Origin: Paramoeba atlantica
Lineage: Eukaryota > Protista > Discosea
Direction: 5' to 3'
DNA: 64,000 bases
NCBI GenBank assembly: GCA_977017575.1
Contig: CDRNVI010000014.1
Span: 1-64,000 of the forward strand
Shown here: positions 6,881 to 54,650 of the stretch, in pieces
Numbering within the stretch: position 1 is the stretch's first letter
How the letters are laid out: every line of letters starts with the position of its first letter
The notes under the pieces: model-generated
What the model was told of the DNA's origin: nothing
Database searches by the model: none
What the model saw: only the letters and a program-made list of their open reading frames with translations
Position numbers and translations under genes: made by a program

Positions 6881-7495
6881 TTAAGTTTTTAGTATTCCAT
6901 TACTCACCGTAACTCGCGTCCATTCAACATTATAGCACAAATTCTTTAGTACGCCATCTACATCCAAGTAACCTTCCAAGTTTATGTTACGATTCAAATA
7001 TAACTCTCTCAAAGTTAGCGGGAGTGAAGAAAAATCAACACAGCCACCAAATTCGTTGTGACCGAATGCGATTTGCTTTAGCATGGGCGGCAAATTACAC
7101 AGGTTTGGGGTTCCCGTAAATTGGTTGCTAGATAAAGTAATAGTTTTTAATGTTCTAGGAAAAGCTTCAAAAGGAAAATTTCCCGAAAACTCATTGTCAT
7201 GAAGAAGTAGAGCCACCAATGTGACGGGCAAATATTTCAGATTCAGTTCACCACGAAGATTTAAATACGACCAATCTATATAGACCACCTTGCCAGCTTT
7301 ATCGCATTCGACACCATCCCATTCATCCGCTGGTGTATTCGTGCTCCAGGTAGAGTCAAGATTCTCTACCTTTTGTAAGAGCCGCATTAAATCATATTCC
7401 GCGGGTAGCGACGCTCCAGTAACCTTACCTGGACGTACAGTCGGTTGCGCATCTGATGCCAGGGATGTGCGTACCAGAGACATGAAAAATAGCAT
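6881..7495 (-). CDS. LRR protein (204 aa), N-cap plus 23-aa LRRs
   Basis: LPAEYDL...W...W.GV.C cap followed by LPxxLxxLxLxxNxFxG repeats. Confidence 0.9.
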   Translation of the reverse strand: MLFFMSLVRTSLASDAQPTVRPGKVTGASLPAEYDLMRLLQKVENLDSTWSTNTPADEWDGVECDKAGKVVYIDWSYLNLRGELNLKYLPVTLVALLLHDNEFSGNFPFEAFPRTLKTITLSSNQFTGTPNLCNLPPMLKQIAFGHNEFGGCVDFSSLPLTLRELYLNRNINLEGYLDVDGVLKNLCYNVEWTRVTVSNGILKT

Positions 7496-8104
7496 ATAGA
7501 ATAGCTTGTAGAAAACACAAAGAATAAAAAGAGATACTGCGTTTTACGACAAACATTACTATTACGCCTAAAACACTGCCAGAGAATGGAAAAGTCTGTG
7601 GAAAAGAATCAAGATCGAATACATTTTTAGTGTGATCTCGGATACTAAGATTAGTAGTGTATGAGAATCAGTGATACAGATAACGAAAAAGGTAGCAAAA
7701 ACATTCATTTACAACGAAAAACACTTAATTGCAATCTGAAATAACATTTATTAGAATTAATAGGACCAAAAACAGTTCCGAAACGTTCACTTAAAATATT
7801 CAAAAAACGCTAGAAGAAAACACCGATTTTAAACGAACTCCGTAAACAGAACAAGGATTTCTCAATTAAAAGTAGACAATATTCATTCATTCGAATAATA
7901 AGTAATAGAAACCAGGGTGATCTACCTCCAAAACGCAAACAACATTTAAAACGAACTGTAAAAATACCAGTAGGATAAGTGACTGTCGTAACAAGAACAG
8001 AAATTTAAGAAAAAAATGCCTTAAAATCTATCCCAACCCCTTTTCACCACATTACATCAACCTTCCCCCCTCATTCTTTCCCCTCTCCCCTGGCTGTTAC
8101 TCAT

Positions 8105-9153
8105 TTACGATTTCAACAGCCCATTTTCCACCGCGCACTGCTTCACCACCTCCGTGCAGTACGGCGCCAACTCCTCCCGCTCCATCGAGTTCAAATCCTT
8201 GAACCCGCTGATTTTGCCGAAACAAAACAGCCGGGCGGGGGAGATACTCGGGGAGAGGGACCCCGCGCGGGTCTGGGACCCTTTCCGTTTCCGTGGTGGG
8301 GTCATGTCCGGGGGGACGGACCCGATCACAGCCCCGGTGGTCATGTCCTGGGCCGCACACACACACTCGAAGGGCTCATCCATGGCGTACTCCGTGGTGA
8401 GGTAGTTGAAACTCAACACCTCCCCGGCGGGAATCGCCGCAATCGTAATCACCCGAAGCACATAGGGGTGGGCGACCATAAAATCTTTGGTCTCATTTCT
8501 AGGCGTCCCGTTTTCGTTCTTCTCCCCCCCTCTTGGGCAGAACTTTCCTCTTTTTTCTGTTCCGGAATCTCACACTCCGGTTCCCCTTTTAATTTTTCAA
8601 TCACCACCTTGGTGTTGGGGCGGCAACTGTGGGCCAGGAACTCGGATCCCCCATAGGGGTTCATGTGGAGCTCCTTGGTGACTTGAATGGTAAATACCGT
8701 CGCGTAGGGGAGGATGGGTCCACGGAGCGTGTAGATCTCCTCGTTCTCCGCGAGATCCACCGCAGCGACCGGAGAGATCCCCATGGGACCTCGACGAAGC
8801 GCGACTTTGTCGGGGTACTTGTTAAAATTCGCCAGGGAGATTTTGGTTTGGCTTTTAGGGGTTGTTTCGCAGGTTGTGTTGTTCTCCTCGGCGGATTTGG
8901 CCATCTTACGTGCAGGGCTTTTACATTCTGTATTTTTTAAAGGAGACTCGGAGGTTTCGGCGGAGGTGTCTACTTTCTCTTCTTCAGGGGTCTCGTTCGC
9001 CATGGAGGCAATCTCACGACGGAGCTCGGTGGAGCAGTAGGGGATAACCGCAATGCGAAAGTCGCAGGAGAGATTGAGGAATTTTTCCACGGTCATGGAT
9101 TGTGCCTCCTTGAGGAGTTCATGGGGGGTAGGTAGGGTCTCGGTAGAGGTCAT
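8105..9153 (-). CDS. SET-domain protein with post-SET cysteines (~349 aa), frameshifted at a 7-nt G run (8524-8530)
   Basis: FLAHSCRPN (NHSC-like) is in one frame; LRVITIAAIPAGEVLSFNYLTTE...FECVC...CFGKISGF is in the other. One extra G fuses them (QEGG-EKNENGTPRNETKDFMVAHPY). Confidence 0.85.
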
Positions 9154-9514
9154 GGAGTTGAAGGGAAGAGTAGCAAGAAAACGGTACTAAAAATAATAAA
9201 AAAGAATTCGAATAGGTATAAAACATGGAAATGAAGGAAAGAGACGAAATACCGTGAGACGCTTCTGGTTCATATCAAATCTGCATGAAATTTCCGTACT
9301 GTGTGAAAGAGTTTTAGATTAATCAAGAGAACAAAGAACTAATTTAGCTCTAAGTAGATGTACTCTAAGTAGTTCTCAATAGATTAAGCACAGTATTAAG
9401 TGCTACTAGAAAATATATTTCATGCATACGTAGGATATTACGAAGAATACGTGCATGAAGATCAAGATTGCCAACACGAAGTTTCAATTTGGAAGCGGTT
9501 CACATGGTCCCAGT

Positions 9515-12500
9515 TCAATAATAGCATGCGTGCGGTCCCAGAATTACGTTCTTCGCATCGGGATTCTCAAAAAGAGGATACAACATGGCGCCGAGTTCTA
9601 AAACAGGTTTCGGAACACTTGGAAGACCCTCTATCCAGGAATCGTCCCCCTCTTCCTCGTCCCCCTCTTCTTCATCTTCCTCATCCCCTTCCTCTTCCCA
9701 TTCTCCGTCCTCTTCCCATTCTCCGTCCTCTTCCCACTCTCTTCTCTCCTCTTTTTTCCTCAAAGGTTTTTTGAACGTCTTTTTGAACGTGTCCCAAAGA
9801 GCACCGTAATCCATCAAAGGAAGAGCTTGCTTGGGCTGCTCCTCCTGGGAACCCACCGCACTCTCTGAGCACGGCGCCTTCATCCCCATCGCTTGAAAAC
9901 ACGCCGCAAGGTTGGGCAAGCGCAACGTCATGCGCTTCTCCTTCTGCCCCCCACAAAAGTGAGTACCCCTCGCGTACGAACCCGAGGTCACGCTCTGACA
10001 ACCCCTCGCCGCACAACGCAGCACCCCCCCCCTCCTGGCCTGCATAAACCGGTTTAACACCTCCAGGGAGGCCCTCACCCGCCGTCGCACCCGTCCCATC
10101 CCCCCCACCATCGGGGCCATCACCGCCCCCAGCGCGAGGACCACCCGCAGCCCATTCATCACCATCACCCCCCACAGGGGGAGGTACACATGGTGGAACC
10201 CGTGACCCTGGCCCGGGACCCGGGGGTCCCCGTACCCCCAGTGTCGCACAAACCCCGAAGGGTCGAGCCCCGCGCCCCACACCGTGGCCCCCCGGGCCTG
10301 GGGCCCGCAACACTGCGACACCATAAAGCACAGGAACTCCTCCCCGGTCTCCACCCCCGGCAGCAGGGCGCTGGTGACCACATAGGACGTGTGGGCCTCG
10401 CGACCCACCGCCTGGGTCTGGAGCGCGTACCCGTACCGGGGCGGGGCGGCCCGGGGAAAGGGGGAGGGAAATGGAGGGTAGGCCAGGCCCCGGGGGCTGG
10501 CCCCGTGGCCGTGGCCCCCTCGGTGGGGCCCACCGTAGGGTGAGCTGTCGTAGTACCCCTCCACGACACTCCAGCTGTCGAGAAACACACGGGCGTCCCC
10601 GTGTGCGGGACTCCTTTTGTGTGGCTTTTGTTTTCCTCCCACGCATCTGTTGTTTTCGTTGTTTTCATCTTGTGAAAAAGAAGAGGACGAAAACAAGACC
10701 CCGGCATTGGGGTTGGTTAACAGTTGATACAAAACTTTCGGTTTGGAGGAGAAGCCGAGAAAGTGGCGATCCTGGATGTGAGCGAACTCGGATTGGAGTT
10801 TGCCTTTTTCTTTACGGTAGAGCCGTCGGAGGAGGTCGACGGGGAGGGGGAAGCGTCGAAGGAGGGGGAGAGGGGGGGAGGGGGTGGGGTTCGTTTGAGT
10901 GGGTTGGGGATCGATTTCGTCATCCTCATCGTCATCACTGTAGCCGCAGAGCTCCGTGCCGTAGAATTTTCGGCGGGAAGAGGAACAGAAACCACGAGAG
11001 AAGGAGGAGGAGGAGGAGGAAGAAAAGGTGGCTAAGGAAGGATTCGAGTTAGCGTCGGGGTCGTTGTCATTAGGATTTGATCCTAGAGTGGTCTCTCTAT
11101 GGGGTGCGGGGGTGTCACAAAAGGTACAGACAAGGGGAGGAGGGATTTCGACCGTGCTCAAGCTTTCGCACATTTCGGACTCCTCTTCTGAGGAGGAGTA
11201 TTCCTCTTCTGAATCGTCGTTCTCCTTCTCCACATTTGTTTCCAAATACCCATCGTGATAGAATTGGTCATTGACGAACTCCACTTTGAGATGACTGCCG
11301 AACTGCGATTTGGTAACCTGACGCACAGGTCCCAATTCCTCAAAATGGGCCCGAACACTCGCTTCTGTGCTGTTTTTTACAATAAGAGAGGTGGAACCGA
11401 ATTCCACTTCCTGGGGGTTGAGCTCGCGGTGTGCCTCGGATTCTCGTGGGGGCTGCATCACTAAGACATGAGACTGACTTGCGAGGAGTATAAACAGAGA
11501 CAGACGACGCGGCCGGAAAACATTCGGGTTGATTTCTCGACGCATGCGAAGGAGACGGGTGGTTTCGGCTGCCGTCAGGGAGGTTCCACAACAGGGCAGT
11601 TTCTCCATCACCTCGAGGAGCTGGCGATCTCGCACACTGAGCAATGTGGGTATAAGCTTGAGCAGTTTCTGTGCAATTCCGCGGACCTCTGTCACAAAGG
11701 ACCGTACCCGGGCGTAGATCAGACTGTGTATTCGACAAAACTCACGCAGTGCGTTCGACTGCCCGGCTTCTCTTGCCTGGGCTCGGTCCATTCCGAGATA
11801 GGTGCTTGCTTCCAGGTAAATCACCAGAAAGGCCACAATATCATTAGCAAAGCCTGCTGACAGAGAGCGCACCCCTTCAACGGTCTGTGCAAACGCCGCG
11901 TGATAATCTGCATTGTTATCGTAAAACACCCGCATAGGATATTTAAACAGCGGTTTTGATAGTGAAAGCCCACAGACCACTACCAGGGTCTCGGGGACAA
12001 TCCCTAAATACGCTGCCGAAACGAGCCACCCGCTGTGAGTGACACTTAATGGAAGTTGGCTCACCACCACCCCAAGTGGGCGAACTTCATACCCCGGAGG
12101 GTTGCCGAGTAGCTGGGCCTGTATCAGTCCCCGCAGCGCGTCCTCGACCGCACCCGTGGCCGGAGCCTCGATAAAACGTGACATTACCTCCTGAGGAGTC
12201 CCAAAGGCTCTCAGGTGGACCCGAGCACGAAGCACGCTGTATTCCAGCGGGTAGAGCTCTGAGGGCTCTACCGGAGGCATCACGACGTCGTGGAGACGTT
12301 CGCTGTATAAACGACACACGATCCCCGTCTGGGTACGTCCCGCTCGCCCAGCACGTTGACGGGCGGCGCCCTGGGAACACCACACGGTTTGAAGCCGTGC
12401 CATTTTTTGCCGCTCCGCGTAGCACACGCGTCGACTAAGCCCGCTGTCCAGCACAATGTGGACATCGGGAATAGTGAGACTTGTCTCCGCGAGATTCGTT

Positions 12501-14608
12501 GCTAAAATTACCCGACACACGGGAGAACTTGTCGAGGAGAGCCGTCGGGTGGCCTTTTGCTGCTCCTCCAGCGGCACCGTGGAGTGGAGCAAAAAGAAGG
12601 AAAGCTCCAACTCGGCGTCGGGGGTCTCCGCCCAACGCTGTGCGGCACGTTGTTGTAGAACCTCACGCTCGGAGTACAGCAGTTCCATCTCCTGTAGCCC
12701 CGGGAGGAACACGAGCACACATCCCATGGGTTTACAAACCGCTGGGATAAGGCAAAGCAACAGGCGATGCATCGCGTCCAGCCCTGGAGGCTCACGGGGG
12801 AGACGAACCAGGCGAGAGGCCCAGTTCTGGATCGCCTCTGTGCCCTCCCGCGTGAGCCCGGAGGTGATCTCCAACGGGAGTGTCTCGAGATAATACTCGA
12901 CGACCGGAAACCGGCGAGTGCCGACTTGTAGACACGGCGGGGGTCCGCCTTGAACCGAGTGAAAGTACGTCACAAAACGCTCCGTCTCCAGCGTTGCGGA
13001 CATGATGATAAGCCTTTTAGCGTTTGTAGGGACACCCGAAGGCTGTGGGTCCAACGTGTCATGGGGGGGTCCACCGTGCCACCCTTTTACCGCGGCCGCC
13101 TCCCGTTCCCGGGCCAGCTTAAGCTTCACCACCAACAGGGTCATATCCTCCTCCAACCCGCGCTCGTGGGCCTCGTCAAACACCAGGTGGGTGAGACGAT
13201 CCCACAGACGGGTGTGATGCAGCAACGACTGCAGGAGGTACCCTGTGGTGACGAACACAATTCGTGTGTGTGGCCCCCCGACACTGTCGTTGGCAATCGC
13301 ATACCCCACCGTGCGCCCCAGCGGCTCCCCAAGGAGAGCCGCGACACGCTGGGCCAGGGAGATGGCGGCCAAGCGTCGGGGCTGGGTCACGACCAAATAG
13401 GGCGTGTTAGCCGTAGGAGTCGTAGTACGTGGGCTAAGGGGGTTTACCCCCTTAGTCGTACTCGGACGACTCACCCCCTCCGAAAAGGTCGTCTCGCCCC
13501 TCACAGGGGATGGGGGCTCCCTTCCCGTGTGGGGGGAGATTTCGGTAAGATTTCGCCACAGTGCGAGAGGGACTTGGGTACTTTTCCCACAGCCCGTTTC
13601 CCCGACCACACAGGTTACGGGGTTGTGCTGGACCGTGTGGACCAGTGTGGGGAGGTAGGGGTCGATGGGGAGAGGGTCGTGGGGGAGGGGGGTGGGGGGA
13701 GGTAGCCTCCCACGGTGGGGGGAGGGGGGTGGGGGTGGAGGTTGGGGGGGTGTGGAGTAGAAGGCGGATTGAAGGCTCGCCGCGAGGGTTTTGGAGGTTG
13801 CGGGGTTTTCGGAGTTCGCGGGAGCGAGAGGGTTGCGGGACGCCGGAGAGGAGACTTGGAGGGATGAGAAAAGGGAGGTTAGTCCGTCGGTTGCTGAAGA
13901 TGAATTTTGGTTAACCCTGTTAGCTTGCGTCGAGGTTGGTGAAGAACCTTCGGGAGGGTTGATTGAATTAAAACTTGCTCCGCTGTGGTTGTAAGAAAAA
14001 TGGGGTGTAAACGGATGGGCTGGTGCCACGACGGAAGATAGTGAAAAGGGATTGTCACAAATTGAATTGTCTTGCGGAACGGATGGAGATCCATGTGTGA
14101 TATGACTAGTGTAAGGAGCATTATCGGTGCAAGAAACAGGAAGAGCGACATTCGGATTGACAGCACGGATTTGCTTTTGCGAGCCATTGAAGAAAGAAAT
14201 TGGTTGCGATGGGGAGTCGGTTTGAATACCTGCGAAGTCGGAAAAGACCTCTTGTGAGGCCGAATATTGACTTTTCACATTATATTCACGAAATGTGTTA
14301 CTACTTTGCATCGACGATGTGCGAGAAGATGCGCTGACGGTCGATGGAGTAAAAACTTCTTTCGGCTGCGATGTGCTCCAATTCGACATGCTTTTTGTTC
14401 CGGTAAAGACAAATGGTAAATTGCCTGGATGCGACAAAAACTCACAGGAACGGTTGTCCTTTTGGTGGTGTTCTTCCTCACCATCTGTATTGTAAACCTG
14501 CACAAAGGGGTTGTTTTCCTTAAACTTTTCGAAAGGATATTCGGCTTGAGAAGTCGACAAGTTAAATTCCTTTGTAGCTGAATGATTTCTTTCCTTCTTT
14601 GAAGACAT
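9515..14608 (-). CDS. DEAH/RHA-family RNA helicase (1697 aa), intron-less, with low-complexity termini
   Basis: GETGCGKST, DEAH, SAT, FLPG, ATNLAETSLTIPDV and QRAGRAGR motifs, then an HA2-like region and an acidic tail. Confidence 0.95.
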   Translation of the reverse strand: MSSKKERNHSATKEFNLSTSQAEYPFEKFKENNPFVQVYNTDGEEEHHQKDNRSCEFLSHPGNLPFVFTGTKSMSNWSTSQPKEVFTPSTVSASSRTSSMQSSNTFREYNVKSQYSASQEVFSDFAGIQTDSPSQPISFFNGSQKQIRAVNPNVALPVSCTDNAPYTSHITHGSPSVPQDNSICDNPFSLSSVVAPAHPFTPHFSYNHSGASFNSINPPEGSSPTSTQANRVNQNSSSATDGLTSLFSSLQVSSPASRNPLAPANSENPATSKTLAASLQSAFYSTPPQPPPPPPSPHRGRLPPPTPLPHDPLPIDPYLPTLVHTVQHNPVTCVVGETGCGKSTQVPLALWRNLTEISPHTGREPPSPVRGETTFSEGVSRPSTTKGVNPLSPRTTTPTANTPYLVVTQPRRLAAISLAQRVAALLGEPLGRTVGYAIANDSVGGPHTRIVFVTTGYLLQSLLHHTRLWDRLTHLVFDEAHERGLEEDMTLLVVKLKLAREREAAAVKGWHGGPPHDTLDPQPSGVPTNAKRLIIMSATLETERFVTYFHSVQGGPPPCLQVGTRRFPVVEYYLETLPLEITSGLTREGTEAIQNWASRLVRLPREPPGLDAMHRLLLCLIPAVCKPMGCVLVFLPGLQEMELLYSEREVLQQRAAQRWAETPDAELELSFFLLHSTVPLEEQQKATRRLSSTSSPVCRVILATNLAETSLTIPDVHIVLDSGLSRRVCYAERQKMARLQTVWCSQGAARQRAGRAGRTQTGIVCRLYSERLHDVVMPPVEPSELYPLEYSVLRARVHLRAFGTPQEVMSRFIEAPATGAVEDALRGLIQAQLLGNPPGYEVRPLGVVVSQLPLSVTHSGWLVSAAYLGIVPETLVVVCGLSLSKPLFKYPMRVFYDNNADYHAAFAQTVEGVRSLSAGFANDIVAFLVIYLEASTYLGMDRAQAREAGQSNALREFCRIHSLIYARVRSFVTEVRGIAQKLLKLIPTLLSVRDRQLLEVMEKLPCCGTSLTAAETTRLLRMRREINPNVFRPRRLSLFILLASQSHVLVMQPPRESEAHRELNPQEVEFGSTSLIVKNSTEASVRAHFEELGPVRQVTKSQFGSHLKVEFVNDQFYHDGYLETNVEKENDDSEEEYSSSEEESEMCESLSTVEIPPPLVCTFCDTPAPHRETTLGSNPNDNDPDANSNPSLATFSSSSSSSFSRGFCSSSRRKFYGTELCGYSDDDEDDEIDPQPTQTNPTPSPPLPLLRRFPLPVDLLRRLYRKEKGKLQSEFAHIQDRHFLGFSSKPKVLYQLLTNPNAGVLFSSSSFSQDENNENNRCVGGKQKPHKRSPAHGDARVFLDSWSVVEGYYDSSPYGGPHRGGHGHGASPRGLAYPPFPSPFPRAAPPRYGYALQTQAVGREAHTSYVVTSALLPGVETGEEFLCFMVSQCCGPQARGATVWGAGLDPSGFVRHWGYGDPRVPGQGHGFHHVYLPLWGVMVMNGLRVVLALGAVMAPMVGGMGRVRRRVRASLEVLNRFMQARRGGVLRCAARGCQSVTSGSYARGTHFCGGQKEKRMTLRLPNLAACFQAMGMKAPCSESAVGSQEEQPKQALPLMDYGALWDTFKKTFKKPLRKKEERREWEEDGEWEEDGEWEEEGDEEDEEEGDEEEGDDSWIEGLPSVPKPVLELGAMLYPLFENPDAKNVILGPHACYY

Positions 14609-15517: not shown

Positions 15518-15540
15518 AGTAGGTATGGGGGGCATAGTGA

Positions 15541-16212
15541 TTAATCAAAAAGAAAAGGAAACGCGAGTAGTGTAATTAACGTAGCGCATCCAAAATAGTG
15601 TTGTGGCTTAGAAATTTCGTCCATGTGATCGTGCAAAATCGAAGGCCAAGCAGACTCCGAAGTATCTTCAGGAAACACGAGAACTTTGTTTCCTCGCAAG
15701 TCGACCCGGATGAAGGTAGGAAGAAAAGAAACATCAACGACACCCATGAAATAGTTCTGATTAAGATGAAGTCTTGCCAAGGATGCTGGCAGGGAGGCCA
15801 GATCAAGGATTCCGTTAAGAAAGTTGTCATTGACGGTAAAGTAGTTGAGGTTGGAGGGTAGTGAAGTTAGATCAAGTTCGGATGAAAACTCATTGTGTTC
15901 AAGTTTTGCTTCCAAGAGTTCGTTCCCCACATTTCCTAACGAAACCTCCCCTTGAAGTTTGTTGTGCGAAATATCTATGCGGTATACCTCAACGGGGAAA
16001 GAACACCACGTGAGATTTCCTCTCAGGTTCATCATCGCCCATTCGAGTCGGATGAGATTTGGAGATCTAAATGCGGGCTGCACTTTATTCCACTTTAGCA
16101 ATGGAGTCAATACGTTCCAGGAAGGATCGGTATTATATACGTTTTGCAAGAAGGAAATCAAACGAACTTCGGGAGGATGAAAAGATGATCGCGCTTTAGC
16201 AAGTCGCGGCAT
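15541..16212 (-). CDS. LRR protein (223 aa)
   Basis: DPSW...W cap and 23-aa repeats such as LPSNLNYFTVNDNFLNGILDLAS; hydrophobic C-terminus. Confidence 0.88.
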   Translation of the reverse strand: MPRLAKARSSFHPPEVRLISFLQNVYNTDPSWNVLTPLLKWNKVQPAFRSPNLIRLEWAMMNLRGNLTWCSFPVEVYRIDISHNKLQGEVSLGNVGNELLEAKLEHNEFSSELDLTSLPSNLNYFTVNDNFLNGILDLASLPASLARLHLNQNYFMGVVDVSFLPTFIRVDLRGNKVLVFPEDTSESAWPSILHDHMDEISKPQHYFGCATLITLLAFPFLFD

Positions 16213-17629: not shown

Positions 17630-18632
17630 TCATACACCTTTCTTGACGGATTTTTCTGACATAAAAGCGGCGTACGTTTCTGGGGTATATCGAGTAACGA
17701 AATCGTTTATACGATGATAACCACACTGACTGACCCCAGGTAGCAAATCTTTGTAGATCACCGCCGTAATAGGATTGTCGCAAAGGTTAATACCTATCCC
17801 TTCTAGACCATGCGCTGTCAAATCCACGACCCCACTGATTTTGTTATTCGAAACATCCAAAGCACTAAAACTTGGAGAAAGAGACGAAACATTAATTGTG
17901 CCCTCAAACATGTTCCCTCCTAATTCTAACTTCCACAGTGACTCTGGGAGACCATCAAGATTAAGTGTACCACTTAATTGATTATAACTCTAAGTTAATA
18001 CAGTCGATAGTCTTGGGCAACGAAGAAAGTTGAATTGTACCCTCGAATTGGTTGTGATCAGCATTAAGAAAGCTCATATTCGGGGGTAGCTGAGTCAGGT
18101 CGACGGTGCCTTGTAGACGATTGTAGGATATCGTAAGATCTTTCATAGAAGAAGGAAGTGTAGAGAAATCGAATACTCCTTGATGGTAATGATAAGCAAC
18201 AGAAAAAATCATCAATGAGGAAGTGAAATCAGAGGAGGATAATGTCCCTGTGAGTCGCCCATTATTCGGACGACGTTGAGCTCCAACTTTTTCAACGCGG
18301 GGAGGTAAAAAAATCCATGTAATGTTTCCGGAAAGATCGAAATGATTCCACCAGAGTTGTATGACTTGTGAGTCAGAGTTGCACTTCACTCCTTCCCAAG
18401 AGCACGCGGACGTGCTTTTCCATGAGGGAGGGGTTTTGTTGACATATTGGACGAGCCGACGCATCATTTCAATCTCAGGCAAAGTTACGAAGCTCACCTT
18501 ACTTCCAAATTTTCGTCTCTTTTGCGCCGGTTGCTGAAGACACTCATCTACACTCGTAGTGAAGGAGATGCGCAATAAAGCATACGAAACACCCGCTCGT
18601 AATATATTCTCGTATCGCAACCTGTCAATCAT
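17630..18632 (-). pseudogene. LRR protein, frameshifted near 17990
   Basis: SW...CSWEGVKC cap and LRRs. Removing one T at ~17989-17990 gives INLEYNQLSGTLNLDGLPESLWKLELGGNMFEG, joining the 17630-17911 frame. Confidence 0.85.
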
Positions 18633-28603: not shown

Positions 28604-29506
28604 TCATTCAAGGGATATACAGGTGCCCATCCATACTTCCTCAAGGTGGTCAAGAACTCCCACAGGAAGCTTTGCCACTCTCAAATTTCCCCTTAATTTC
28701 TTATTTTCATGCAAAAAGAGATGTGTCATGACACGGGGGAGTTGGTGCAAATCTACGTTTCCTTCGAACGCGTTGTGATCCAAGAGAAGCTCCTTAAGAG
28801 TCCCGGGTAGTTTGGTTAATACCAATTTTCCTGACAGTACGTTATACGAAAGTTTTAGTTCCACTAAGTTGGGAGGTAAAGTTACGAGACATATACAATC
28901 AGTCAAAAAGTTGCGCATTAAATTGAGCACATTCATACTACCAGGAAGCAAAGTCAGATCTAACGACCCGGTCAGAGCGTTATCGCTGAGTACGCAACTG
29001 TGTAAGCAACTTCCCGTGGCAATATTTGCAAAACTCACGTCACCTGAGAGGTCACAGTAAAATGCTTCAAACTCTTTCACAGTAGCGGGAATATGTTCGA
29101 AATCAAGTGAACCTACTAGATGTGTCCAGGACCAGTGGATTGATTCAACGTTTCCACCCTCATCGCAGTAGACTCCAGTCCACTCACAAGCCGGTGTCTC
29201 AGTGGTCCAGCATTCTGGCTTCACACTCAGTCTGCTTACCAAAGCTTCTAACGTATATTCTTGGGGTAATGTGATTCTACTGATTTTGCCCTTCCGTGTA
29301 ACCACTGGCCTACAGTTTGTTGCATTCGACTTCGGAAGATCTGTTCCCGATAATTGCCCTACAGACGATTTCGTTCCGTCATCTATTTTTCGTTTCTTTA
29401 TGGGCCGCGCTTCTACGTCTGACAGTCGCGTACGTGAAATCATTAATTTTAGGCCCAAAAAATACTTTACTGACTTTTTCTTTGCAACTAATTCCGGTTG
29501 ACCCAA
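28604..29506 (-). CDS. LRR protein (300 aa) with basic N-terminal extension
   Basis: PIKKRKID, LPQEYTL, W...PACEWTGVYC cap and about six LRRs. Confidence 0.9.
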   Translation of the reverse strand: MGQPELVAKKKSVKYFLGLKLMISRTRLSDVEARPIKKRKIDDGTKSSVGQLSGTDLPKSNATNCRPVVTRKGKISRITLPQEYTLEALVSRLSVKPECWTTETPACEWTGVYCDEGGNVESIHWSWTHLVGSLDFEHIPATVKEFEAFYCDLSGDVSFANIATGSCLHSCVLSDNALTGSLDLTLLPGSMNVLNLMRNFLTDCICLVTLPPNLVELKLSYNVLSGKLVLTKLPGTLKELLLDHNAFEGNVDLHQLPRVMTHLFLHENKKLRGNLRVAKLPVGVLDHLEEVWMGTCISLE

Positions 29507-36297: not shown

Positions 36298-36725
36298 AAA
36301 AAATGTACGACAAATTAGACCTCCAAAAGCTTTATTTTTACAAAAAAAAATAGTGAACCCCAATTGTGACCCCTTTAATATGCACCCCCTCATACCTCCT
36401 TTTAATAAGCACAAATTTGAAGATAGAACATGTTAGTAATGTTTCCCCCCCAACCCTGGCCGAGCTAACGAACGCTGCGGTTCGTGAAGTGAGGCCTATA
36501 CGTAACATTGAATGTTTTTTTTACTGATACTGGAAACAAACATTGCACTCTCCTGTACCGCCCCTTCTTTTTCACCCCACTGACACAGCAACACCGTTTT
36601 TGCCGTGTCACACATCACATCTTCTGTTCACCCCCTTTCCGAACCCACCACCCCAACTTCGTTCTGCATTGAAACCTTCTCATCGAAAGCTTCTCTTCCT
36701 TAGAAATTTGTCTTACAAAACCGAT

Positions 36726-39700
36726 TTACCCCCCAAACCCGCTACGGTACCCCCGCAACACATTTTCAATCTCCCCCACGGAGGACTGCAACAGTGTCGC
36801 AATCTCCCGTCGTGAGGGCTGCGAGAGGCTCCCCCACACCGCCTCCACAAAGTCCCCGTCCACGATCCCTTTCCGTGGGAGGTAGTAGGAGCGGTAGGCG
36901 TTGTGGTCGGTGCCCCCTAGGCTGTAGTCCCGGGGGTTGGGCTCCCAGAACCCCCGGCTGAGTTGCGTCGCCCGGGGAGGGCGACGACCACCCGCGAGAC
37001 CCAGCCCGTACTGCGGGAGTCGAGGGGTCGTCGCGCTCTCGGGCTCAAACCCCGTCGCACCCCCCTCTGCGGTGTAGTCAAAAGGGTTTCGAGGGAGCTG
37101 CCCGTGGGTGTGGAGGGCATTCTCCAGCCGCGTAAGCAGCGTGGCCTCCACATCGGTGAGCAAAGGCTGTACCGTGCCAATGGCCCCCCCTAGCGTGGTA
37201 TACACCAACGCAGGGGAGGGGGAAGAAAGGGAAGGGACAGAAGCAGAACCAGAAGAACCCGAAACTGGGGTTGTTCCACTGGATAGCCCCGTCGTAGAGG
37301 AACCTGCTCGTTCCCCGGGCTGAGGGATGTCCCCCCTGATTCCCCCTTCTCCCAGGGAGGACAGTGTCGACAGGGAGGTCACCACATCCCCAACATACCA
37401 CTGTGTCAACACCTCCACCTGTTGGGGTCGGGTGCGGGTGGATTGCTGCAGCAGGGCTGCCGCGAGCTCAGGGGTTGTGGTTTTATTCATGACCCCTGTG
37501 GAGGAAGAAGACGAGGAGAGGGCGGAGTCCGCAACCCTCACTGCGGTCTCACTCCCGCGTGCGATACTCTCCTCGCTGACATCCTCCCGCACGTGTCGTG
37601 GCACGCGCAGGGTGGTGAGGCCCCCGTAGCGGTCCGCGACCGCAACCGTGTGGTAATCCAGCACGGTGAGCGCGGTGATGGCCCGGGGGAGGGTGTCCTC
37701 GGCGAATACCGACAACAGATTCGCCGAGGGGGTGTAGTGCACGAAGAACACACTCTCGGCGGCATCCGCCACGAACACCCGACGGGAGAGGGAGGCGACC
37801 CGGGTGACGCGGGTGGGGAAACCCCGGCGCTCACATTTCAACAGCATTTTACGCTTGCCCAGGGCGTAGAGCTGGAGTGTGGTGTGAACCCCGACCAGGA
37901 GTTTCCCCACACGGGGGCCAAACTCGCACAGGGTGAAGGGAATCCCCGGCAGGGGGGTTTTGTGCGCCAGGCGGAGCGTGGGGGCGGTAGGGGAGGACGA
38001 GGAGGATGGCGAGGGCCCAGCGCTCGCGGGGGTTCCCGTACCCAATGCGGGGGGTACGATTTCAAATACTAACAGGGTCCCGGGCATTGTGTCACGTCCG
38101 GAGTCGGTTGCCCCATTTCCGGCACTGCTCGCACTCGAGGTGACACCGAGAGGTTCGGAAAACAGAGCACTCGCGGAGGCAGCGCCTACCACTACGTAGT
38201 CCGTTTCCCCAGAGGAGAAGCAACAAAGACTCACCGCCGCCAAGTCGCCGTCAAGCTCCATCAAATCCACCGTCACGGGGGGAATTTCCGAGATCGTCCC
38301 GTGACGTCGGGAATCTGTGCCAAAATTTGGAGAACCGGAATCGGGAATTAACCCTTGCAACGCCACGGCATTTCCCGCTTCAACATTTTGCGCGGCCAAG
38401 TCGTGCGGCAACGATGAGAGATTTGCCCCGGCACGAGTGAGTGACCCCAGGGAGTGGACATCCACCAGACGGAGATACGACACACATTGCCGAGCGCTGC
38501 CACGGAACCCGACGCCGTATTCCCGATTCTCCTCGAGCGCAAGACTCGCGGAGGGGTTGCTGCTGCTGTTGCTCATCATTTCATTCTCGGATTCCCCGGT
38601 CGCCACACGCTGTTGTGCGACCCCGGCTCGGTATTTTTGCCTCTCTTCGGTATTTAGTGTGTGCGGATCGGTTTCAATCACCGCAGCGTAACGACACTGC
38701 TGGGGGAGAAGAACGAGCTGCCGGGGGGTAGCGCCCAGAGGGAGTTTAGGGGTCAACAAAGGGGTATGCAAGGGAGAGGATGCGAAAGAAGAACGAAAAC
38801 TACCGGGGGAGGATAGACGGGTTGTCTCCCATAATGTAGTGAGCTCACGGAGTTGTAACGCCCCGGTTCGGGAGACCGTTAAAAGGCGCAGCGTGTGGGC
38901 ATTGGGGTCCGCCTCCCATGCACAGCTCTCGATGACGGGCTCATGCAGTACGGTGTGAAATTGTGTCGGGTCGCCGTAATATTTGGGAATCCCATCAACT
39001 GGAGGTGCAGTGGCACTCGCGGATAAGCTTTCTTGTTTCTCCATTAAATAGACCCCTGTCAGACGAAGGCCACTCTCAGATTGTAACGCAATGGCGAAAA
39101 ATTGATGTACCAGGCCCACAGGAGAGGGAGAAGCGGAGTCGATTATCGGGGTGGTCTGGGAGGTACATCGCCAAAACAATTTCTTCACTCTCACAGGGCC
39201 GGTTTCGGACACGACACGTACAATCGGAGCGTGAAAGGTAACGCTGTGTCGAATTGCGAGGGATAAATGAACCGATGAAGTGCTCTCTTGAAGAGGTTGA
39301 ATCCCCAGTTCGCGTACCTCCACGGTTCCGTTATGCAGCCCAAGATACAGAAACAACCGAGTGGGGGAAGAATCGCTCGTTGCCAGCTCTGCCGCGTCGC
39401 TACTCTCCGAGATCTCTACCTCCCCTACCGGCTGCCACGCCAGCACGACGCTAGCAATCTCAACCGCACATTGAAGCGTGGCACGCACCTCCAGCCCCCG
39501 CGCTGTCGAGGACTGGCGCATATTTCGAGGCAGTGGAATTTCAACCACCCATAACTCCCGTCGATCTGTAGCGACGGCCATAAACGAGAACGGCTTACGT
39601 TGACCAATACTAGACGGGGAAGAAGACCCCGTTACCTCCGCACTCACCATCTCCGGGGAGTGTATCACATCCAGCCCGCGCACACTCCCGCTGAGCTCCA

Positions 39701-42526: not shown

Positions 42527-43132
42527 TTATAAGGAAACGAAAAATGGAACATCCGGCCTTCTGGAAAACTTATTTCCCCGCAGAAAAAGTTGAACCAAAC
42601 TTGCTGGCAGCTTGGAAAGATCTCCCACACTGTCAAATTCATTGCCGTTGAGGTACAACGATGTCAAGTTTGGAGGCAACAACGTCAGATCCAGATCTCC
42701 TGAAAACTGATTTCCTCGGAGGTTTAAATACGTCAAACGAGAGGGCAACTCCGTCAAATCTACAGTTCCGAAGAAACTGCAACAAGGAATCACAAAACTG
42801 TTCAATCCGATGGGAAGCTCATTAACAAACAGTCTTCCCGTCATCCCTTTCTGATGCCATATGGAAAACTCTTTTGTAGTATGCGGCATGTGACTCCACG
42901 CAAGTGTTCCAACGTAATTCGTTTCGAGTCGAATGTATCCGACATAGTCACTGGTGCCGCATTCCACACTTTTCCACTCACACGCGGGCGTGTCAATCGT
43001 CCATGAGGAGTCCGGATTGGAGATGTTGGCTAAGAACCGAACGAGATTGTGTTCTTGTGGAAGAACAGATTTACTCACCTTCGAGGGCCGGGCGAGGTCT
43101 TGGAACGTGTCTTTGAAGCTAAGGGAGAACAT
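42527..43132 (-). CDS. LRR protein (201 aa)
   Basis: RPSKV..LPQEHNL, SW.IDTPACEWKSVEC cap and 23-aa repeats (LPSRLTYLNLRGNQFSGDLDLTL). Confidence 0.9.
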   Translation of the reverse strand: MFSLSFKDTFQDLARPSKVSKSVLPQEHNLVRFLANISNPDSSWTIDTPACEWKSVECGTSDYVGYIRLETNYVGTLAWSHMPHTTKEFSIWHQKGMTGRLFVNELPIGLNSFVIPCCSFFGTVDLTELPSRLTYLNLRGNQFSGDLDLTLLPPNLTSLYLNGNEFDSVGDLSKLPASLVQLFLRGNKFSRRPDVPFFVSL

Positions 43133-46840: not shown

Positions 46841-47431
46841 TTACATAATTTTATTACGCCGCAAATCTACATTCTTCAAATGAACTGGAAGTCTTGAAAA
46901 ATCCACTGGTCCCTCAAAGCAGTTTCTATTGAGCTCCAAAACAACTAAATTAGGGGGAAGTGACATTAGGTCCAGAGATCCTTTGAATCGATTTCCATTG
47001 AGATTTAAAGTTGTCAAAGCAGGCGGAAGCACTGTCATGTCTAAATTACCGAAAAGATCGCAATTCGGAACACGAAAGATATTTAGAGCAGCAGGGAGTT
47101 CCCTAACAGGCAAGATCCCAGAAATTCCGGATCGACTGATTTCACATGTTTGAATACTCCCTGGCATATAACCCCATGCCAAAGTCCCGTAATACTCCGG
47201 TGCGGCATATCGGCTCATTCCAATTTCGATCGCTATAACATTTTGATTTTTATCACAGGACACTCCCTTCCATTCACACGCTGTTGTATTTGCTGTCCAC
47301 GATTCGTGTGGATTGTGAATGTTTGCAACGAATTGAGCTAGACTGTATTCTTGTGGAAGAAATGTACCTCGCACTTTCGAAGGACGGGACACGCCCGTGT
47401 CTTTACAACGAAGAAAAGACGAAATAAACAT
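46841..47431 (-). CDS. LRR protein (196 aa)
   Basis: RPSKV..LPQEYSL, SW..NTTACEWKGVSC cap and LRRs. Confidence 0.9.
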   Translation of the reverse strand: MFISSFLRCKDTGVSRPSKVRGTFLPQEYSLAQFVANIHNPHESWTANTTACEWKGVSCDKNQNVIAIEIGMSRYAAPEYYGTLAWGYMPGSIQTCEISRSGISGILPVRELPAALNIFRVPNCDLFGNLDMTVLPPALTTLNLNGNRFKGSLDLMSLPPNLVVLELNRNCFEGPVDFSRLPVHLKNVDLRRNKIM

Positions 47432-47905: not shown

Positions 47906-49031
47906 TATTCACAAGACGGGTTATCTCGATGAGCTTACTCTGTACCTAGCTTAGTTCTGTACCTTGTTGATTATGATAACTAAAAATAAAACTTAATAAT
48001 AATAAAAACCACACCCGACCTCAGTTCCGTCATACCCGGAATTGTCCTCCCACCGTCACTCAGACCTCGGGGACCATCCTAGCTCCTCTACGATCTCCAA
48101 GCGGCAGACAAAACCTGTTGTCCCACCATCTCCGTCACGATTAGCTTCCGTGGGTCACGTGGCTGGCGTTGTCGGCACAGCAGTACGGAATGGACTGTTT
48201 CGTTCAGGTGAAAAATATCAAGGATCACAACCCACGGAGCACGGAGCACGTGCACAGGAACTGCTTGAGCAAGCTGTGTTGCGTCTTGCATCTCAAGTGT
48301 CGGAACTACGTAGCTAGCTCGGTTGCAATTCGGAGTAGGTGAGCAATCGAATCAGAAGGTTTTAATACCCCCGTTACACGCATCACAGAACGCTAATCCT
48401 CACGCATTGTAGCTTTCATTAGCATTGTAGCTCCGGTTCTGAGCTCGGAAAAAGATTTCAAATTCCTTCAACAGTGGATTACAAGAGGTCCCTAATACAG
48501 TCTTCTATCACCATGTCATCCAAGGTTCCCAACTACAAAACTTGATGCGGCCAGACATTTTACAGCCTATGCAAAGAAAAATGTTAGCGGAGTCATGTAA
48601 GTAGCAAAAATATGATGCTTAATCATTCGCATAGATAATACTGAAGTAAATTTTTATTTAAAAAAGTCCAAAAATTGAGTTTTTTTTCTTTACGTAGATA
48701 ATACGTTTATATATATAATACTGAAATTTGTTCGAAACTAACATAAAAAAATCAAGTTGTTTTTGGAAAAGGGAAAAAAGTCCCTTTTTACCGAGAATCT
48801 TCCTCAGAAAGTGCGAAACGAATTGAGAATCCCAATGAATAATATTTATACATAGGATAGACGTATGCATAGGATATACATAAGATAGATGTATACATAG
48901 GATAGATGTATGCCGCCGTACATCTAAGAGTATTGGGACTCCTTTGTTTTTTGGGTCCGAGAAACATTCGCACGCGGGGGAACAGATGCTACAGCGAATG
49001 CGGCTCACGTGCAACGCGGTCCACGTGCAGT

Positions 49032-52280: not shown

Positions 52281-53020
52281 ACTCTCAAGAAAAAGGAGGA
52301 AGTAGTCAAACACAGTCCACAACTCCGTTTTTTTGCTGTTTTTGCTGTCTGCGTATCTGAGAGTTTCTGTGGTTTTTCTCAGTGTCGATTCAGGTACGCG
52401 GAATCAATCCATAGATATTGCATTTATGACCGCCCATGATAAAATACAGTGCGCCCAGATAGTAAAGTTTTTTTTGGTAGTTACCACCGATTTTGGGAAA
52501 CAGCACAGCACTTGTGCTTTTTCGCGATGTTAGTGGGAAGCAATTTGCGAAGCCCAATGCACATGCACTAGAACAACCACCGCTTTTTTACGAAGCGATA
52601 GGATATACGAATCTTATACGAAGCAGTGATACACGATCTTATACGAAGCAGCTAACACATTTCAATAATCGAGAACGCTTTTACAGATAATGTATACCCC
52701 CCCTCCATTATTATCTACATCTAAATATAGAAAAACAAGTTTATGTAGATGCCCCCCATATTAAATTTGGAAGAAGGTCGATTGAATTTTCAATGGAATT
52801 TTCAAGAATAATTCTAAAAAAGGCACAGTACTGAGCATAAAGACATATTTTGTAGTCGCTTCAACGCGCATGAAGAAATGTGAAAAGAAGCTCGAATTCA
52901 CCGACAAAATCAGAAGAAAGGCATGTTATAAGACCTCATTTCACTATAACATGCAGGGGGAACATGGCAGGAGGAGTACCTCGTTGAAAAAGAGTTGGAG
53001 AAGGCTACAACGACTGCAAA

Positions 53021-53665
53021 TTAAGTGTTCATTATCTTTTGATAGCTGATCATGATCTGAGGAGGTACGTACTCAGGAATATTAAAGAAATTTCTGGAAA
53101 TTCTTACCTTCTCTATCTGCGGGGGGAGTTTCGTAAAGTCAAGGTCTCCGCAGAAACAATTGTCCGCCAAATCGATTTGACGCAGTGACGCAGGAAGACA
53201 AGTGAAATCGACCGTACCTTCGAAATGGTTTGTGTCCAGGCGAAGCAGACACAAAGAAGAAGGCAAATTAGTAAAGTCTAAGGTACCAGTATGTAAATTG
53301 GTGCTTATATCAAAATCTTCTAGTTTAGAAGGCAACAGAGAAACATTCAAATTCCCCGTCAGGGACTGCCAGTATGCCTCAAATAGAAGCACGGTATGCG
53401 GCATGTATTCCCACTTAAAACTTCCACAAATATGTGCTGATGAGTCAAACTGAATGTCTCCCCAGTTCAGAGACGCTACCTCCTTTTGAGGGTTACACTC
53501 GACGTATGTCCATTCACACGCAGGATTTTGCGCATTCCATGATGACTCTGACGTAGTAATGTTGCTGATGAATTGTGTTAGCGTATATTCTTGAGGCAGT
53601 AAACCCGTACGCACTCTGCCTGCTCGTGAGGACATGTTCTCAGCGGCACGGAAGAACAGTGACAT
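53021..53665 (-). CDS. LRR protein (214 aa)
   Basis: RAGRV..LPQEYTL, SW..NPACEWTYVEC cap and LRRs. Confidence 0.9.
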   Translation of the reverse strand: MSLFFRAAENMSSRAGRVRTGLLPQEYTLTQFISNITTSESSWNAQNPACEWTYVECNPQKEVASLNWGDIQFDSSAHICGSFKWEYMPHTVLLFEAYWQSLTGNLNVSLLPSKLEDFDISTNLHTGTLDFTNLPSSLCLLRLDTNHFEGTVDFTCLPASLRQIDLADNCFCGDLDFTKLPPQIEKVRISRNFFNIPEYVPPQIMISYQKIMNT

Positions 53666-53825
53666 GTCGAATCAAGGGCAAGTGAAAAAAAATAGTGAGA
53701 TTAGACAAAATAAGACGATTAGGCACATAAGATAGAAATTCATGGATGAAGATTTCAATAAAGGTATCTGAACAGAAAGTGATTGACTCGAATATAGTTT
53801 GAAGGAATTTAGAACAAACTGAACC

Positions 53826-54650
53826 CTACAAATTATAACTTAGAACTGCCCTTCGTCCGAAAGTTCCGGAAAGTTCCGCCCGAAAGTTCCAAGCTTCGGA
53901 ATCAAAGACATATCGAATCGGCAAAAAGCACGTGTACGACGCACGACTTGGAAGCGTTTTAATCTGAGTTCCGCGGCAAGAGATCCAATTGTAAAATCGC
54001 GCTGGATCATATTCGCCGCTCAGATTGGGGTTGTTATGCAGCGATAGTACAATGTAGTAGGGCAGGTGTAGCAAATCTACGGGTCCCGAAAAATTATTGC
54101 CCGATAGTTTTAATATACGAGACTGGTCCCATACCGACCCTAGGTTAAGACCACCTGAAAAGCCATTGCGGCTTAAATCTAGACTGACAAGCCCGAACGA
54201 CAATTCATGCAGGGCAATTGCGCCTTGAAAATTGCAACCAATTAGAGTAAGCTCCTCGAGGTTTTCGTGCACTTCCCGCAAGTTTAGAGTCCCATTAAAT
54301 AAGTTACGAGGCGCACTAAATTTCTTCAATTTTGGTGGGAATAATTCGAGCGGGAGTTGTCCCATTAGCTGATTTCTATTGAACCATACCCTTTCGGATA
54401 GTACATTCGAAAAATATACCCAGCGAGGAATACCTCGAAGAGCGCGCCCCCACCACTGTATGCGTTTGATTTTTAGGTCGTCTTCACACAAGACTCCATC
54501 CCATTTACACGCAGGAGTTTCCGTATTCCACGATAGATGTTTGTTGCTGATGTCCTGTAAAAATTGTGCTAAATGATATTCCTGTGGTAATGCGGCTCGC
54601 GCCTTTCCCAAACGGCTGCGTGAGAAGGAGAAATCCGCCATATAGCGCAA
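53826..54650 (-). CDS. LRR protein (274 aa)
   Basis: RLGKA..LPQEYHL, SWNTETPACKWDGVLC cap and LRRs. Confidence 0.9.
   Translation of the reverse strand: MRYMADFSFSRSRLGKARAALPQEYHLAQFLQDISNKHLSWNTETPACKWDGVLCEDDLKIKRIQWWGRALRGIPRWVYFSNVLSERVWFNRNQLMGQLPLELFPPKLKKFSAPRNLFNGTLNLREVHENLEELTLIGCNFQGAIALHELSFGLVSLDLSRNGFSGGLNLGSVWDQSRILKLSGNNFSGPVDLLHLPYYIVLSLHNNPNLSGEYDPARFYNWISCRGTQIKTLPSRASYTCFLPIRYVFDSEAWNFRAELSGTFGRRAVLSYNL

What the first reader, a model, noticed from the sequence alone, without database searches (positions are those of the whole stretch)
6881..54650. Expanded LRR family with a shared, apparently unnamed leader motif
Seen: seven small LRR proteins carry R-x-[GSA]-[KR]-[VAI], then 3-4 residues, then a conserved LP[QA]E[YH]xL-like block, before a W..C.W.GV.C cap: RPGKV..LPAEYDL, RPSKV..LPQEHNL, RPSKV..LPQEYSL, RAGRV..LPQEYTL, RLGKA..LPQEYHL, RKGKI..LPQEYTL, and the more divergent RLAKA..HPPEVRL. 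An eighth has GSKV..LPEIEM. The copies are highly diverged, mostly intact and dispersed between housekeeping genes. Inference: the leader may be a sorting or translocation signal or a structural pre-cap helix, and the family may act in host or partner recognition.
Basis: partly seen in the sequence, partly recalled or inferred. Interest (0 to 1): 0.72.

Follow-up and report, generated by a model that had tools for sequence, protein, structure and literature searches.

The report
Conserved leader on Perkinsela-type LRR proteins
Eight small leucine-rich-repeat genes of a Perkinsela-like amoeba symbiont share a real N-terminal motif, but half of it is simply the start of the known plant-type LRR cap and the family was already noted in 2017. 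Only a short basic block in front of the cap remains unexplained.

Summary
A strict pattern for the leader hits seven times in the six-frame translation, only in the minus-strand LRR genes; an eighth gene (g3) carries the divergent form.

The motif is two things:
- LPQEYxL is the N-cap and first turn of the LRRNT_2 capping helix, by the Pfam alignment, two AlphaFold models and structural alignment to plant LRR ectodomains.
- RxGKV(R/S)G lies outside every Pfam model. It sits in a gap-free register with the cap in 41 of 42 diverged relatives. K/R is kept in 95% of them, although silent codon positions are saturated. A G-[KR]-hydrophobic version occurs in Perkinsela sp. CCAP 1560/4.

The distance from the start codon varies from 2 to 70 residues, and no canonical signal peptide is present. 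It therefore looks like a cap-proximal element and not an N-terminal sorting signal. About a third of relatives carry a PxxKRRK block further upstream.

One window gene (g7) has a 100% identical transcript contig headed by a spliced-leader tail.

The family is the "leucine-rich proteins" of Tanifuji et al. 2017 (462+ genes, function unclear). This scan had already flagged the same leader on other pieces of this genome (s1-370043, s1-381676).

The parts
6881..7495 (-). g1, 204-aa small LRR protein. Its leader RPGKV..LPAEYDL is at 7388-7435. The first cap Cys is replaced by D.
15541..16212 (-). g2, 223 aa. Its divergent leader RLAKA..HPPEVRL (16159-16206) starts at residue 3. Both cap cysteines are absent.
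17982..18632 (-). g3, 216-aa ORF. Leader GSKV..LPEIEM is at 18462-18509, directly preceded by QKRRK. The gene is frameshifted: three more LRR units continue in another frame downstream of the stop, to about 17720.
   Evidence: (LRRNT_2 22.7 bits)
28604..29443 (-). g4, 279 aa from the first ATG. Leader RKGKI..LPQEYTL is at 29249-29296. An upstream NLS-like PIKKRK starts at residue 14.
42527..43132 (-). g5, 201 aa. Leader RPSKV..LPQEHNL is at 43043-43090.
46841..47431 (-). g6, 196 aa. Leader RPSKV..LPQEYSL is at 47339-47386. It was modelled with a 60-sequence alignment: pLDDT 91.7, helix at residues 27-34, and pLDDT about 62 over residues 11-20, which include the basic block at 16-20.
   Evidence: (LRRNT_2 26.8 bits)
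53021..53665 (-). g7, 214 aa. Leader RAGRV..LPQEYTL is at 53579-53626.
52626..53708 (-). Transcribed span of g7. It is 100% identical over 1083 nt to transcript contig Ga0186503_107683. The 5' UTR is 43 nt with no upstream AUG. The contig's first 10 nt (CTGTACCTTG) are not encoded here and look like a spliced-leader tail.
53826..54641 (-). g8, 271 aa from the first ATG. Leader RLGKA..LPQEYHL is at 54570-54614, with a spacer one residue shorter than in the other copies.
54846..56714 (-). g9, 622-aa ORF with the same 23-residue LRR type at its C-terminus but no leader or Cys cap. It is a relative, not a carrier of the motif.

Best explanation
The eight genes belong to the very large family of small LRR-only proteins of the Perkinsela lineage, the kinetoplastid endosymbionts of Paramoeba. 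Each protein has a plant-type LRRNT_2-like cap followed by 3-9 repeats of a 23-residue unit (LPxxLxxLxLxxNxFxGxVDLxx). None has a canonical signal peptide, a transmembrane segment or a C-terminal cap.

The 'leader' has two parts.
1. LPQEYxL is the N-cap and first turn of the capping helix that shields the hydrophobic core of the first repeat. This is shown.
2. R-x-[GAS]-K-V-[RS]-G is a family-specific, basic, extended segment immediately in front of that helix. It keeps a fixed register with the cap and is under purifying selection at the protein level. This is shown.

I infer that the second part works as a cap-proximal element. It either packs onto or extends the cap, or it presents a fixed binding epitope next to it. 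I do not think it is an N-terminal sorting signal.

Any sorting information is more likely to lie in the variable region upstream. That region has a short hydrophobic start and, in about a third of relatives, a PxxKRRK block 13-23 residues from the Met.
For: - Pfam: LRRNT_2 aligns from profile positions 4-7 at the Q/E of LPQEY. It passes the gathering score in g3, g6, g7 and g8. No model covers RxGKV.
- AlphaFold: g7 has a helix at 25-32 (QEYTLTQF), and g6 at 27-34.
- Fold: VIA-align gives Z 17-21 and rmsd about 2 A over about 166 residues to BRL2, PSKR, HAESA and SERK1 ectodomains. Model ranges start at residues 24-26, the L-P, in nearly all 50 rows. Foldseek's top hits are OsSERK2 and BAK1.
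- Conservation in 42 non-redundant relatives, aligned without gaps from the cap W: R(-29) 62%, [GAS](-27) 86%, K/R(-26) 95%, V(-25) 76%, L(-20) 90%, P 95%, E 93%. Upstream of -30 there is only about 0.7 bits. The W-to-CxW spacing is constant in 41 of 42.
- The K and V columns are about as constrained as the LRR core positions.
- Codon test in the window genes: the RxGKV block is 47% identical at the amino-acid level, but codon positions 1/2/3 are 0.63/0.56/0.32 identical. Selection therefore acts on the peptide and not through recent gene conversion.
- The region before the block is 2-70 residues long, and none has an uncharged run of 15 or more.
- G-[KR]-hydrophobic, four residues, then [LM]-[PS]-Q-[QE], with the same spacing, is present in Perkinsela CCAP 1560/4 XU18_1880 and in a tandem array of a second related genome.
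- Other LRRNT-bearing proteins among the 150 best profile hits have ordinary signal peptides and no such block.
- Tanifuji et al. 2017 list family members as cytosolic with negative signal-peptide predictions.
Against: - AlphaFold gives the basic block only pLDDT under 50 (g7, shallow alignment) or about 57-62 (g6, 60 sequences), with no secondary structure. No docked conformation is predicted, which fits a flexible linear motif equally well.
- The profile used to collect relatives contained the leader, so the sample is somewhat biased towards carriers.
- I could not scan the whole proteome for the block on non-LRR proteins. Only this 64-kb window was checked.
- No localisation, N-terminal proteomic or binding data exist.
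- The conserved Cys pair of the cap forms a disulfide in plants (from my own knowledge, not tested here). That sits oddly with a protein that lacks an ER signal.
Confidence: 0.5

Rival explanations
1. The basic block is a signal-peptide-independent export or host-targeting tag that sends these LRR proteins from the endosymbiont into the amoeba cytoplasm. It would be functionally analogous to PEXEL or RxLR motifs.
For: - The block is conserved, basic and predicted unstructured.
- There is no canonical signal peptide.
- The organism lives in the cytoplasm of its host, and Tanifuji et al. propose secretion into the host.
- The family is very large and has hypervariable LRR surface positions.
Against: - The block is fixed relative to the cap but lies 2-70 residues from the N-terminus.
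- It does not match PEXEL (RxLxE/Q/D) or RxLR, both of which follow a signal peptide (from my own knowledge).
- It was not seen on other ORFs in the window.
- No secretion data exist.
Confidence: 0.15
2. The block is the downstream half of a nuclear localisation signal. It would work alone (three basic residues in six) or as a long-linker bipartite signal together with the upstream PxxKRRK block.
For: - 13 of 42 relatives, including g3 and g4, carry K[KR]x[KR] clusters, mostly PxxKRRK, 13-23 residues from the Met.
- The R-x-x-K-x-R pattern is basic.
Against: - Two thirds of members lack the upstream cluster.
- The linker is 15-30 residues and variable in length.
- The Perkinsela-type relatives have G-R-[LFV]-D, with one basic and one acidic residue.
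- The conserved hydrophobic V/L/F is not an NLS feature (from my own knowledge).
Confidence: 0.12
3. The block marks a proteolytic maturation site at which the variable N-terminal region is removed, so that all mature proteins start at the same point before the cap.
For: - A variable-length, variable-sequence region ends at a sharply conserved basic block.
- In plant LRR ectodomains the equivalent position is the signal-peptide cleavage region (chain ranges).
- Perkinsela-type relatives have a short hydrophobic start ending in small residues followed by D or S.
Against: - No known protease consensus fits. The block is not dibasic, and the hydrophobic stretch is too short for a canonical signal peptide.
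- In g2 only two residues precede the block.
- Signal-peptide predictors were negative in Tanifuji et al.'s table.
Confidence: 0.08
4. The shared block is passive similarity left over from recent duplication or gene conversion, with no constraint of its own.
For: The genes are paralogues in one directional cluster.
Against: - Third codon positions in the block are at 0.32 identity while positions 1 and 2 are at 0.63 and 0.56.
- The flanking spacer and the upstream region are not conserved.
- The block persists across representatives less than 50% identical to each other and in a different genome type.
Confidence: 0.02

Closest known systems
Perkinsela sp. 'leucine-rich proteins' (Tanifuji et al. 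2017, Sci Rep 7:11688, Supplementary Note 1.4)
   Same: The best named hit is XU18_1880 of Perkinsela sp. CCAP 1560/4 (34% identity, E 1e-26; profile E 2e-85). The family has hundreds of small LRR-only paralogues with RNA-seq support, and its members are predicted cytosolic.
   Different: - That note does not mention the N-terminal leader.
- The window copies ('type A') keep the CxWxGVxC cap and have K-V-[RS]-G, where XU18_1880 has G-K-V-D-Q and lacks both cap cysteines; other 'type B' relatives read G-R-[LFV]-D and some keep the Cys pair.
- The window copies are dispersed among housekeeping genes. In a related genome they form a tandem array.
LRRNT_2 cap (PF08263) of plant LRR receptor ectodomains (SERK1/BAK1, HAESA, PSKR, BRL2)
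   Same: The helix, the W and the CxWxGVxC cap are shared. Four of eight genes pass the Pfam gathering score. Structural alignment gives Z 17-21 and rmsd about 2 A from the L-P onward.
   Different: - Plant proteins have a cleaved signal peptide directly in front of the cap; these proteins have none (from my own knowledge for plants; for these).
- These proteins add the conserved RxGKV(R/S)G segment.
- Their repeats are 23 residues long, not the plant-specific 24.
- They have no C-terminal cap, transmembrane segment or kinase.
Host-targeting leaders of intracellular eukaryotes (PEXEL RxLxE/Q/D; oomycete RxLR-dEER), compared from my own knowledge of the motifs
   Same: Both are short, basic, conserved motifs near the N-terminus of large, fast-diverging families in an organism that lives with or inside a host.
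   Different: - PEXEL and RxLR follow a signal peptide at a loosely fixed distance from the N-terminus.
- The present block has no signal peptide, a different sequence pattern, and is fixed to the folded domain instead.
PTS2 glycosomal import signal ([RK][LVI]x5[HQ][LA]), compared from my own knowledge of the consensus
   Same: Both are N-terminal, with a basic-plus-hydrophobic pair followed some residues later by Q.
   Different: The spacing here is x6, not x5. A conserved Pro lies inside the stretch. The final positions are Q-E/Q, not [HQ][LA]. It is not a PTS2.

Membership tests
LRRNT_2 (PF08263) | Score at or above the Pfam gathering threshold (20.7 bits) | tested here: met
   g3 22.7, g6 26.8, g7 23.6 and g8 23.7 bits. 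g4 (16.8) and g5 (13.8) are below the cut-off. g1 and g2 have no hit.
LRRNT_2 (PF08263) | Capping helix, then W, then a CxWxGVxC pair | tested here: met
   Present in 6 of 8 window genes and in 40 of the 42 type A sequences analysed (39 of them were picked by this pattern). The helix is predicted at the QEY position.
LRRNT_2 (PF08263) | The whole leader lies inside the model | tested here: not met
   Alignments begin at profile positions 4-7 at Q/E of LPQEY. RxGKV lies 4-9 residues before the start of the model. Structural alignments start at L-P.
Plant-specific LRR class | 24-residue repeat LxxLxxLxLxxNxLSGxIPxxLGx (consensus from my own knowledge) | tested here: not met
   242 units give a 23-residue consensus LPxxLxxLxLxxNxFxGxVDLxx. 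The fold is nevertheless closest to plant LRR ectodomains.
Perkinsela leucine-rich protein family (Tanifuji 2017) | Significant similarity to Perkinsela CCAP 1560/4 members; small LRR-only architecture; many paralogues | tested here: met
   XU18_1880 at E 1e-26 and profile E 2e-85. There are eight paralogues in 64 kb.
Canonical ER signal peptide | N-terminal hydrophobic core of roughly 8-15 uncharged residues followed by a cleavage region | tested here: not met
   No pre-block region has an uncharged run of 15 or more; 3 of 42 reach 12. Pre-block length is 2-70 residues. This was a crude hydrophobicity test, because SignalP was not available.
PTS2 | [RK][LVI]x5[HQ][LA] nonapeptide | tested here: not met
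   By inspection of the aligned leaders, the spacing is x6 and a Pro lies inside the stretch.
Classical monopartite NLS | K-[KR]-x-[KR] cluster | tested here: inconclusive
   Present upstream of the block in g3, g4 and 13 of 42 relatives, but it is not part of the block itself. Function was not tested.
Bodonin (Bodo saltans) | Sequence similarity to bodonins | not tested
   Tanifuji et al. report no BLAST hits between bodonins and the Perkinsela family. I did not repeat the search.

The most novel reading that the evidence does not exclude
The conserved N-terminal region is a signal-peptide-independent delivery code. It comprises the short hydrophobic start, the optional PxxKRRK block and the fixed basic block. 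It would send a diversified LRR repertoire out of the endosymbiont into the amoeba, with the KRRK-bearing subset going on to the host nucleus, next to which the endosymbiont lies (its position is from my own knowledge). This would be a new kind of host-targeting leader in a eukaryote-in-eukaryote symbiosis.
Probability: 0.1. Interest if true: 0.8.

Novelty: new variant of a known kind. Interest (0 to 1): 0.35.

Why it matters
Perkinsela-type endosymbionts devote hundreds of genes to small LRR proteins whose role has been called unclear since 2017.

This work splits the shared 'leader' into a plant-type cap helix and a fixed-register basic block that is under protein-level selection. It also separates out an optional NLS-like module further upstream. 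That gives three defined elements to mutate or fuse to reporters.

It also corrects the idea that the whole motif is an unnamed sorting signal. If the basic block proved to be a binding or delivery determinant, it would be a handle on how the kinetoplastid and its amoeba host talk to each other. If it is only a cap extension, the finding is an annotation refinement.

Tried and rejected
- I searched for homologues of the RSE1/SF3B3-like neighbour to test synteny of the dispersed copies. It returned only the window's own protein.
- The degenerate DNA scan of metagenome contigs for K-V-x4-LPQEYEL gave one match, on a 127-kb metagenome contig; the one frame I translated over it is full of stops and not LRR-like, so I treat it as chance. 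That collection evidently lacks the transcript sample.
- PTS2, PEXEL/RxLR and a canonical signal peptide were considered and rejected on pattern, spacing and hydrophobicity.
- Gene conversion as the cause of the similarity was rejected by the codon-position test.
- The transcript contigs of two paralogues (L004, L005) show no clear spliced-leader tail at their 5' ends.
- Literature searches for Perkinsela together with LRR terms found no description of the leader.


Full report
**What is in the window.** All ORFs of at least 120 aa were listed.

From about 6.8 kb to 60 kb the large genes lie on the minus strand:
- a DEAD/DEAH-type helicase at 9515-14608;
- an OCRE-tailed membrane protein at 34192-36414;
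- an RSE1/SF3B3-like protein at 36726-42011;
- a PP2C at 57987-59123.

Plus-strand ORFs in between look like mobile elements.

Eight small ORFs on the same minus strand are LRR proteins, here called g1 to g8: 6881-7495, 15541-16212, 17982-18632, 28604-29443, 42527-43132, 46841-47431, 53021-53665 and 53826-54641. tblastn with the family finds these eight loci and only one more, the C-terminal LRRs of a 622-aa ORF (g9, 54846-56714) that lacks the leader.

A strict pattern for the leader hits seven times, only in these genes. From residue frequencies I estimate about 5e-5 hits by chance. The eighth gene (g3) has GSKV..LPEIEM.

In-frame stops lie 2-28 codons upstream of each first ATG. The N-termini are therefore well bounded, and the block starts between residue 3 (g2) and residue 50 (g4).

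Corrections:
- The cysteine pair of the cap is complete in six of eight genes.
- g4 and g8 start at internal ATGs of the listed ORFs.
- g3 is frameshifted. Three further LRR units continue in another frame after its stop.

**Which organism and family.**
- The best named relative is hypothetical protein XU18_1880 of Perkinsela sp. CCAP 1560/4.
- A profile search adds unnamed proteins from long ENA contigs.
- An exhaustive profile search gives 43,969 LRR proteins at E up to 0.001 and 2,370 at E up to 1e-30.
- Two paralogues elsewhere in this genome cluster at 90% identity or more with MMETSP transcripts. One of these is catalogued as Paramoeba atlantica in EukProt.
- Tanifuji et al. [quoted passage not shown] Their localisation table lists members as cytosolic with negative signal predictions. 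They do not mention the leader.

Two earlier notes of this scan (s1-370043, s1-381676) reached the same family and the same split of the tag on other pieces of this genome. My result agrees with them and was obtained independently before I read them.

**The LPQEYxL half is the cap helix.**
- Pfam LRRNT_2 aligns from profile positions 4-7 at the Q/E of LPQEY and runs to the second Cys. It passes the gathering score in g3, g6, g7 and g8.
- AlphaFold2 models of g7 (10-sequence alignment, pLDDT 85.9) and g6 (60 sequences, pLDDT 91.7) put a helix at QEYTLTQF and QEYSLAQF.
- Foldseek's best matches are OsSERK2, SERK1 and BAK1 ectodomains.
- VIA-align gives Z 17-21 and rmsd about 2 A over about 166 residues to plant LRR ectodomains. 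The aligned model range starts at residues 24-26, the L-P, in nearly every row.

**The RxGKV half is real, outside the known model, and tied to the cap.** I used 42 non-redundant 'type A' relatives: the representatives, which are less than 50% identical to each other, plus the window genes. They can be stacked without gaps from the cap W.
- Column frequencies are R(-29) 62%, G/A/S(-27) 86%, K/R(-26) 95%, V(-25) 76%, R/S(-24) 83%, L(-20) 90%, P 95%, E 93% and L(-14) 93%.
- Upstream of -30 the columns fall to about 0.7 bits.
- The K and V columns are about as constrained as the LRR core positions.
- Among the window genes the block is 47% identical in amino acids, while codon positions 1/2/3 are 0.63/0.56/0.32 identical. 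The peptide is under selection and the DNA is saturated.
- The stretch before the block varies from 2 to 70 residues and never contains an uncharged run of 15 or more.
- 13 of 42, including g3 and g4, carry a PxxKRRK-like cluster 13-23 residues from the Met.

**Older relatives.** Perkinsela CCAP 1560/4 and a second related genome have a 'type B' N-terminus. The second genome carries a tandem array, at L002 10001-13910. The type B N-terminus reads:
- a Met followed by 5-10 hydrophobic residues;
- then [AT]-[AD]-D and a few residues;
- then [LI]-G-R-[LFV]-D, three residues, and [LM]-[SP]-[QD]-Q-x-x-M-E-L-L-V.

The G-to-L spacing is the same as in type A. Some type B proteins lack the cap cysteines. 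The pattern used to collect them makes their column statistics circular. However, the short and nearly constant distance of the G from the Met (9-21 residues in 32 of 38) is not circular.

Larger LRRNT-bearing proteins among the 150 best hits have ordinary signal peptides and no such block.

**Transcription.**
- The exact g7 protein is encoded on a 1,093-nt contig of JGI sample 3300017035, which also holds MMETSP transcripts.
- Positions 11-1093 of that contig match window 53708-52626 at 100%.
- The 43-nt 5' UTR has no upstream AUG, so the assigned N-terminus stands.
- The first 10 nt (CTGTACCTTG) are not encoded at that place. The same 10-mer, preceded by AGTT, occurs at window 47953-47966. 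It resembles the 3' end of kinetoplastid spliced leaders (from my own knowledge).

**Reading.**
- Shown: the motif exists; it has a two-part nature; it is in fixed register with the cap; selection acts on the peptide; no canonical signal peptide is present; and g7 is transcribed.
- Inferred: the basic block is a cap-proximal structural or binding element and not an N-terminal sorting signal. The reason is that it is fixed to the domain and floats relative to the N-terminus.
- Against this inference: AlphaFold gives the block low confidence and no secondary structure. A flexible linear motif therefore remains a live rival. Such a motif could act in export, nuclear import with the upstream KRRK, or processing.

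**Verdict.** This is a confirmed but largely explained finding: a known family, half of the motif a known cap, and the rest a lineage-specific extension of unknown role. The same leader had already been flagged twice in this scan.

Noticed in passing
window 1-5794: The first 5,794 bases are 99.95% identical and colinear with chromosome OZ220716.1 of an uncultured gammaproteobacterial MAG (2.45 Mb). Its next relatives are Legionellales/Coxiellaceae-like MAGs at 43-47% RsmB identity. The segment carries rsmB, an esterase, lysA and recG. Identity stops abruptly inside recG at 5794/5795, where kinetoplastid-type sequence begins. This is most simply a chimeric assembly join; a real integration is not excluded.
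   Followed up: partly
window 53700-53720 (minus strand) and 47953-47966 (plus strand): The spliced-leader-like tail of the g7 transcript is joined to genomic sequence where no AG dinucleotide precedes the junction; the nearest AG is about 60 nt further upstream. An SL-like fossil (AGTTCTGTACCTTG) lies in an intergenic stretch at 47953-47966.
   Followed up: partly
window 17720-17985, minus strand: g3 is interrupted by a frameshift. About three more LRR units read on in another frame after its stop. It is either a pseudogene or an assembly indel.
   Followed up: partly
window 54846-57568, minus strand: Two overlapping ORFs in different frames may be one frameshifted gene. One is 622 aa with C-terminal LRRs. 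The other is 376 aa, with a polyQ tract and a cap-like SW..W.RV segment. They lie in a GC-rich stretch. No in-frame stop occurs in the 600 nt upstream of the 622-aa ORF's listed start.
   Followed up: no
L002 10001-19839 (ENA ERZ25071330, contig ctg580726_138x_l): In a related genome the family forms a head-to-tail array of at least four genes of about 259 aa, plus several more diverged copies on the same strand. This contrasts with the dispersed copies of the window.
   Followed up: partly
window 43021-63669 compared with L001 (ENA ERZ24900291 ctg4010l): The public contig that carries g7 differs from the window by about 0.8% (59 mismatches and 25 gaps in 18.6 kb). By coordinates it would begin near window position 27.7 kb. 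g2 lies on a separate 19.5-kb public contig. The window therefore comes from a different, more contiguous assembly or haplotype. A tandem repeat at 61095-61635 gives multiple offset matches.
   Followed up: partly
N-termini of family members (for example g4, window about 29390-29443; P0103, P0132, P0107, P0139): A second conserved N-terminal module is present in 13 of 42 relatives. It reads Met, 4-8 mostly hydrophobic residues, [SD]-D-x-Q-E-P-P-x-K-R-R-K, with the basic cluster 13-23 residues from the Met. It looks like a classical nuclear localisation signal.
   Followed up: partly
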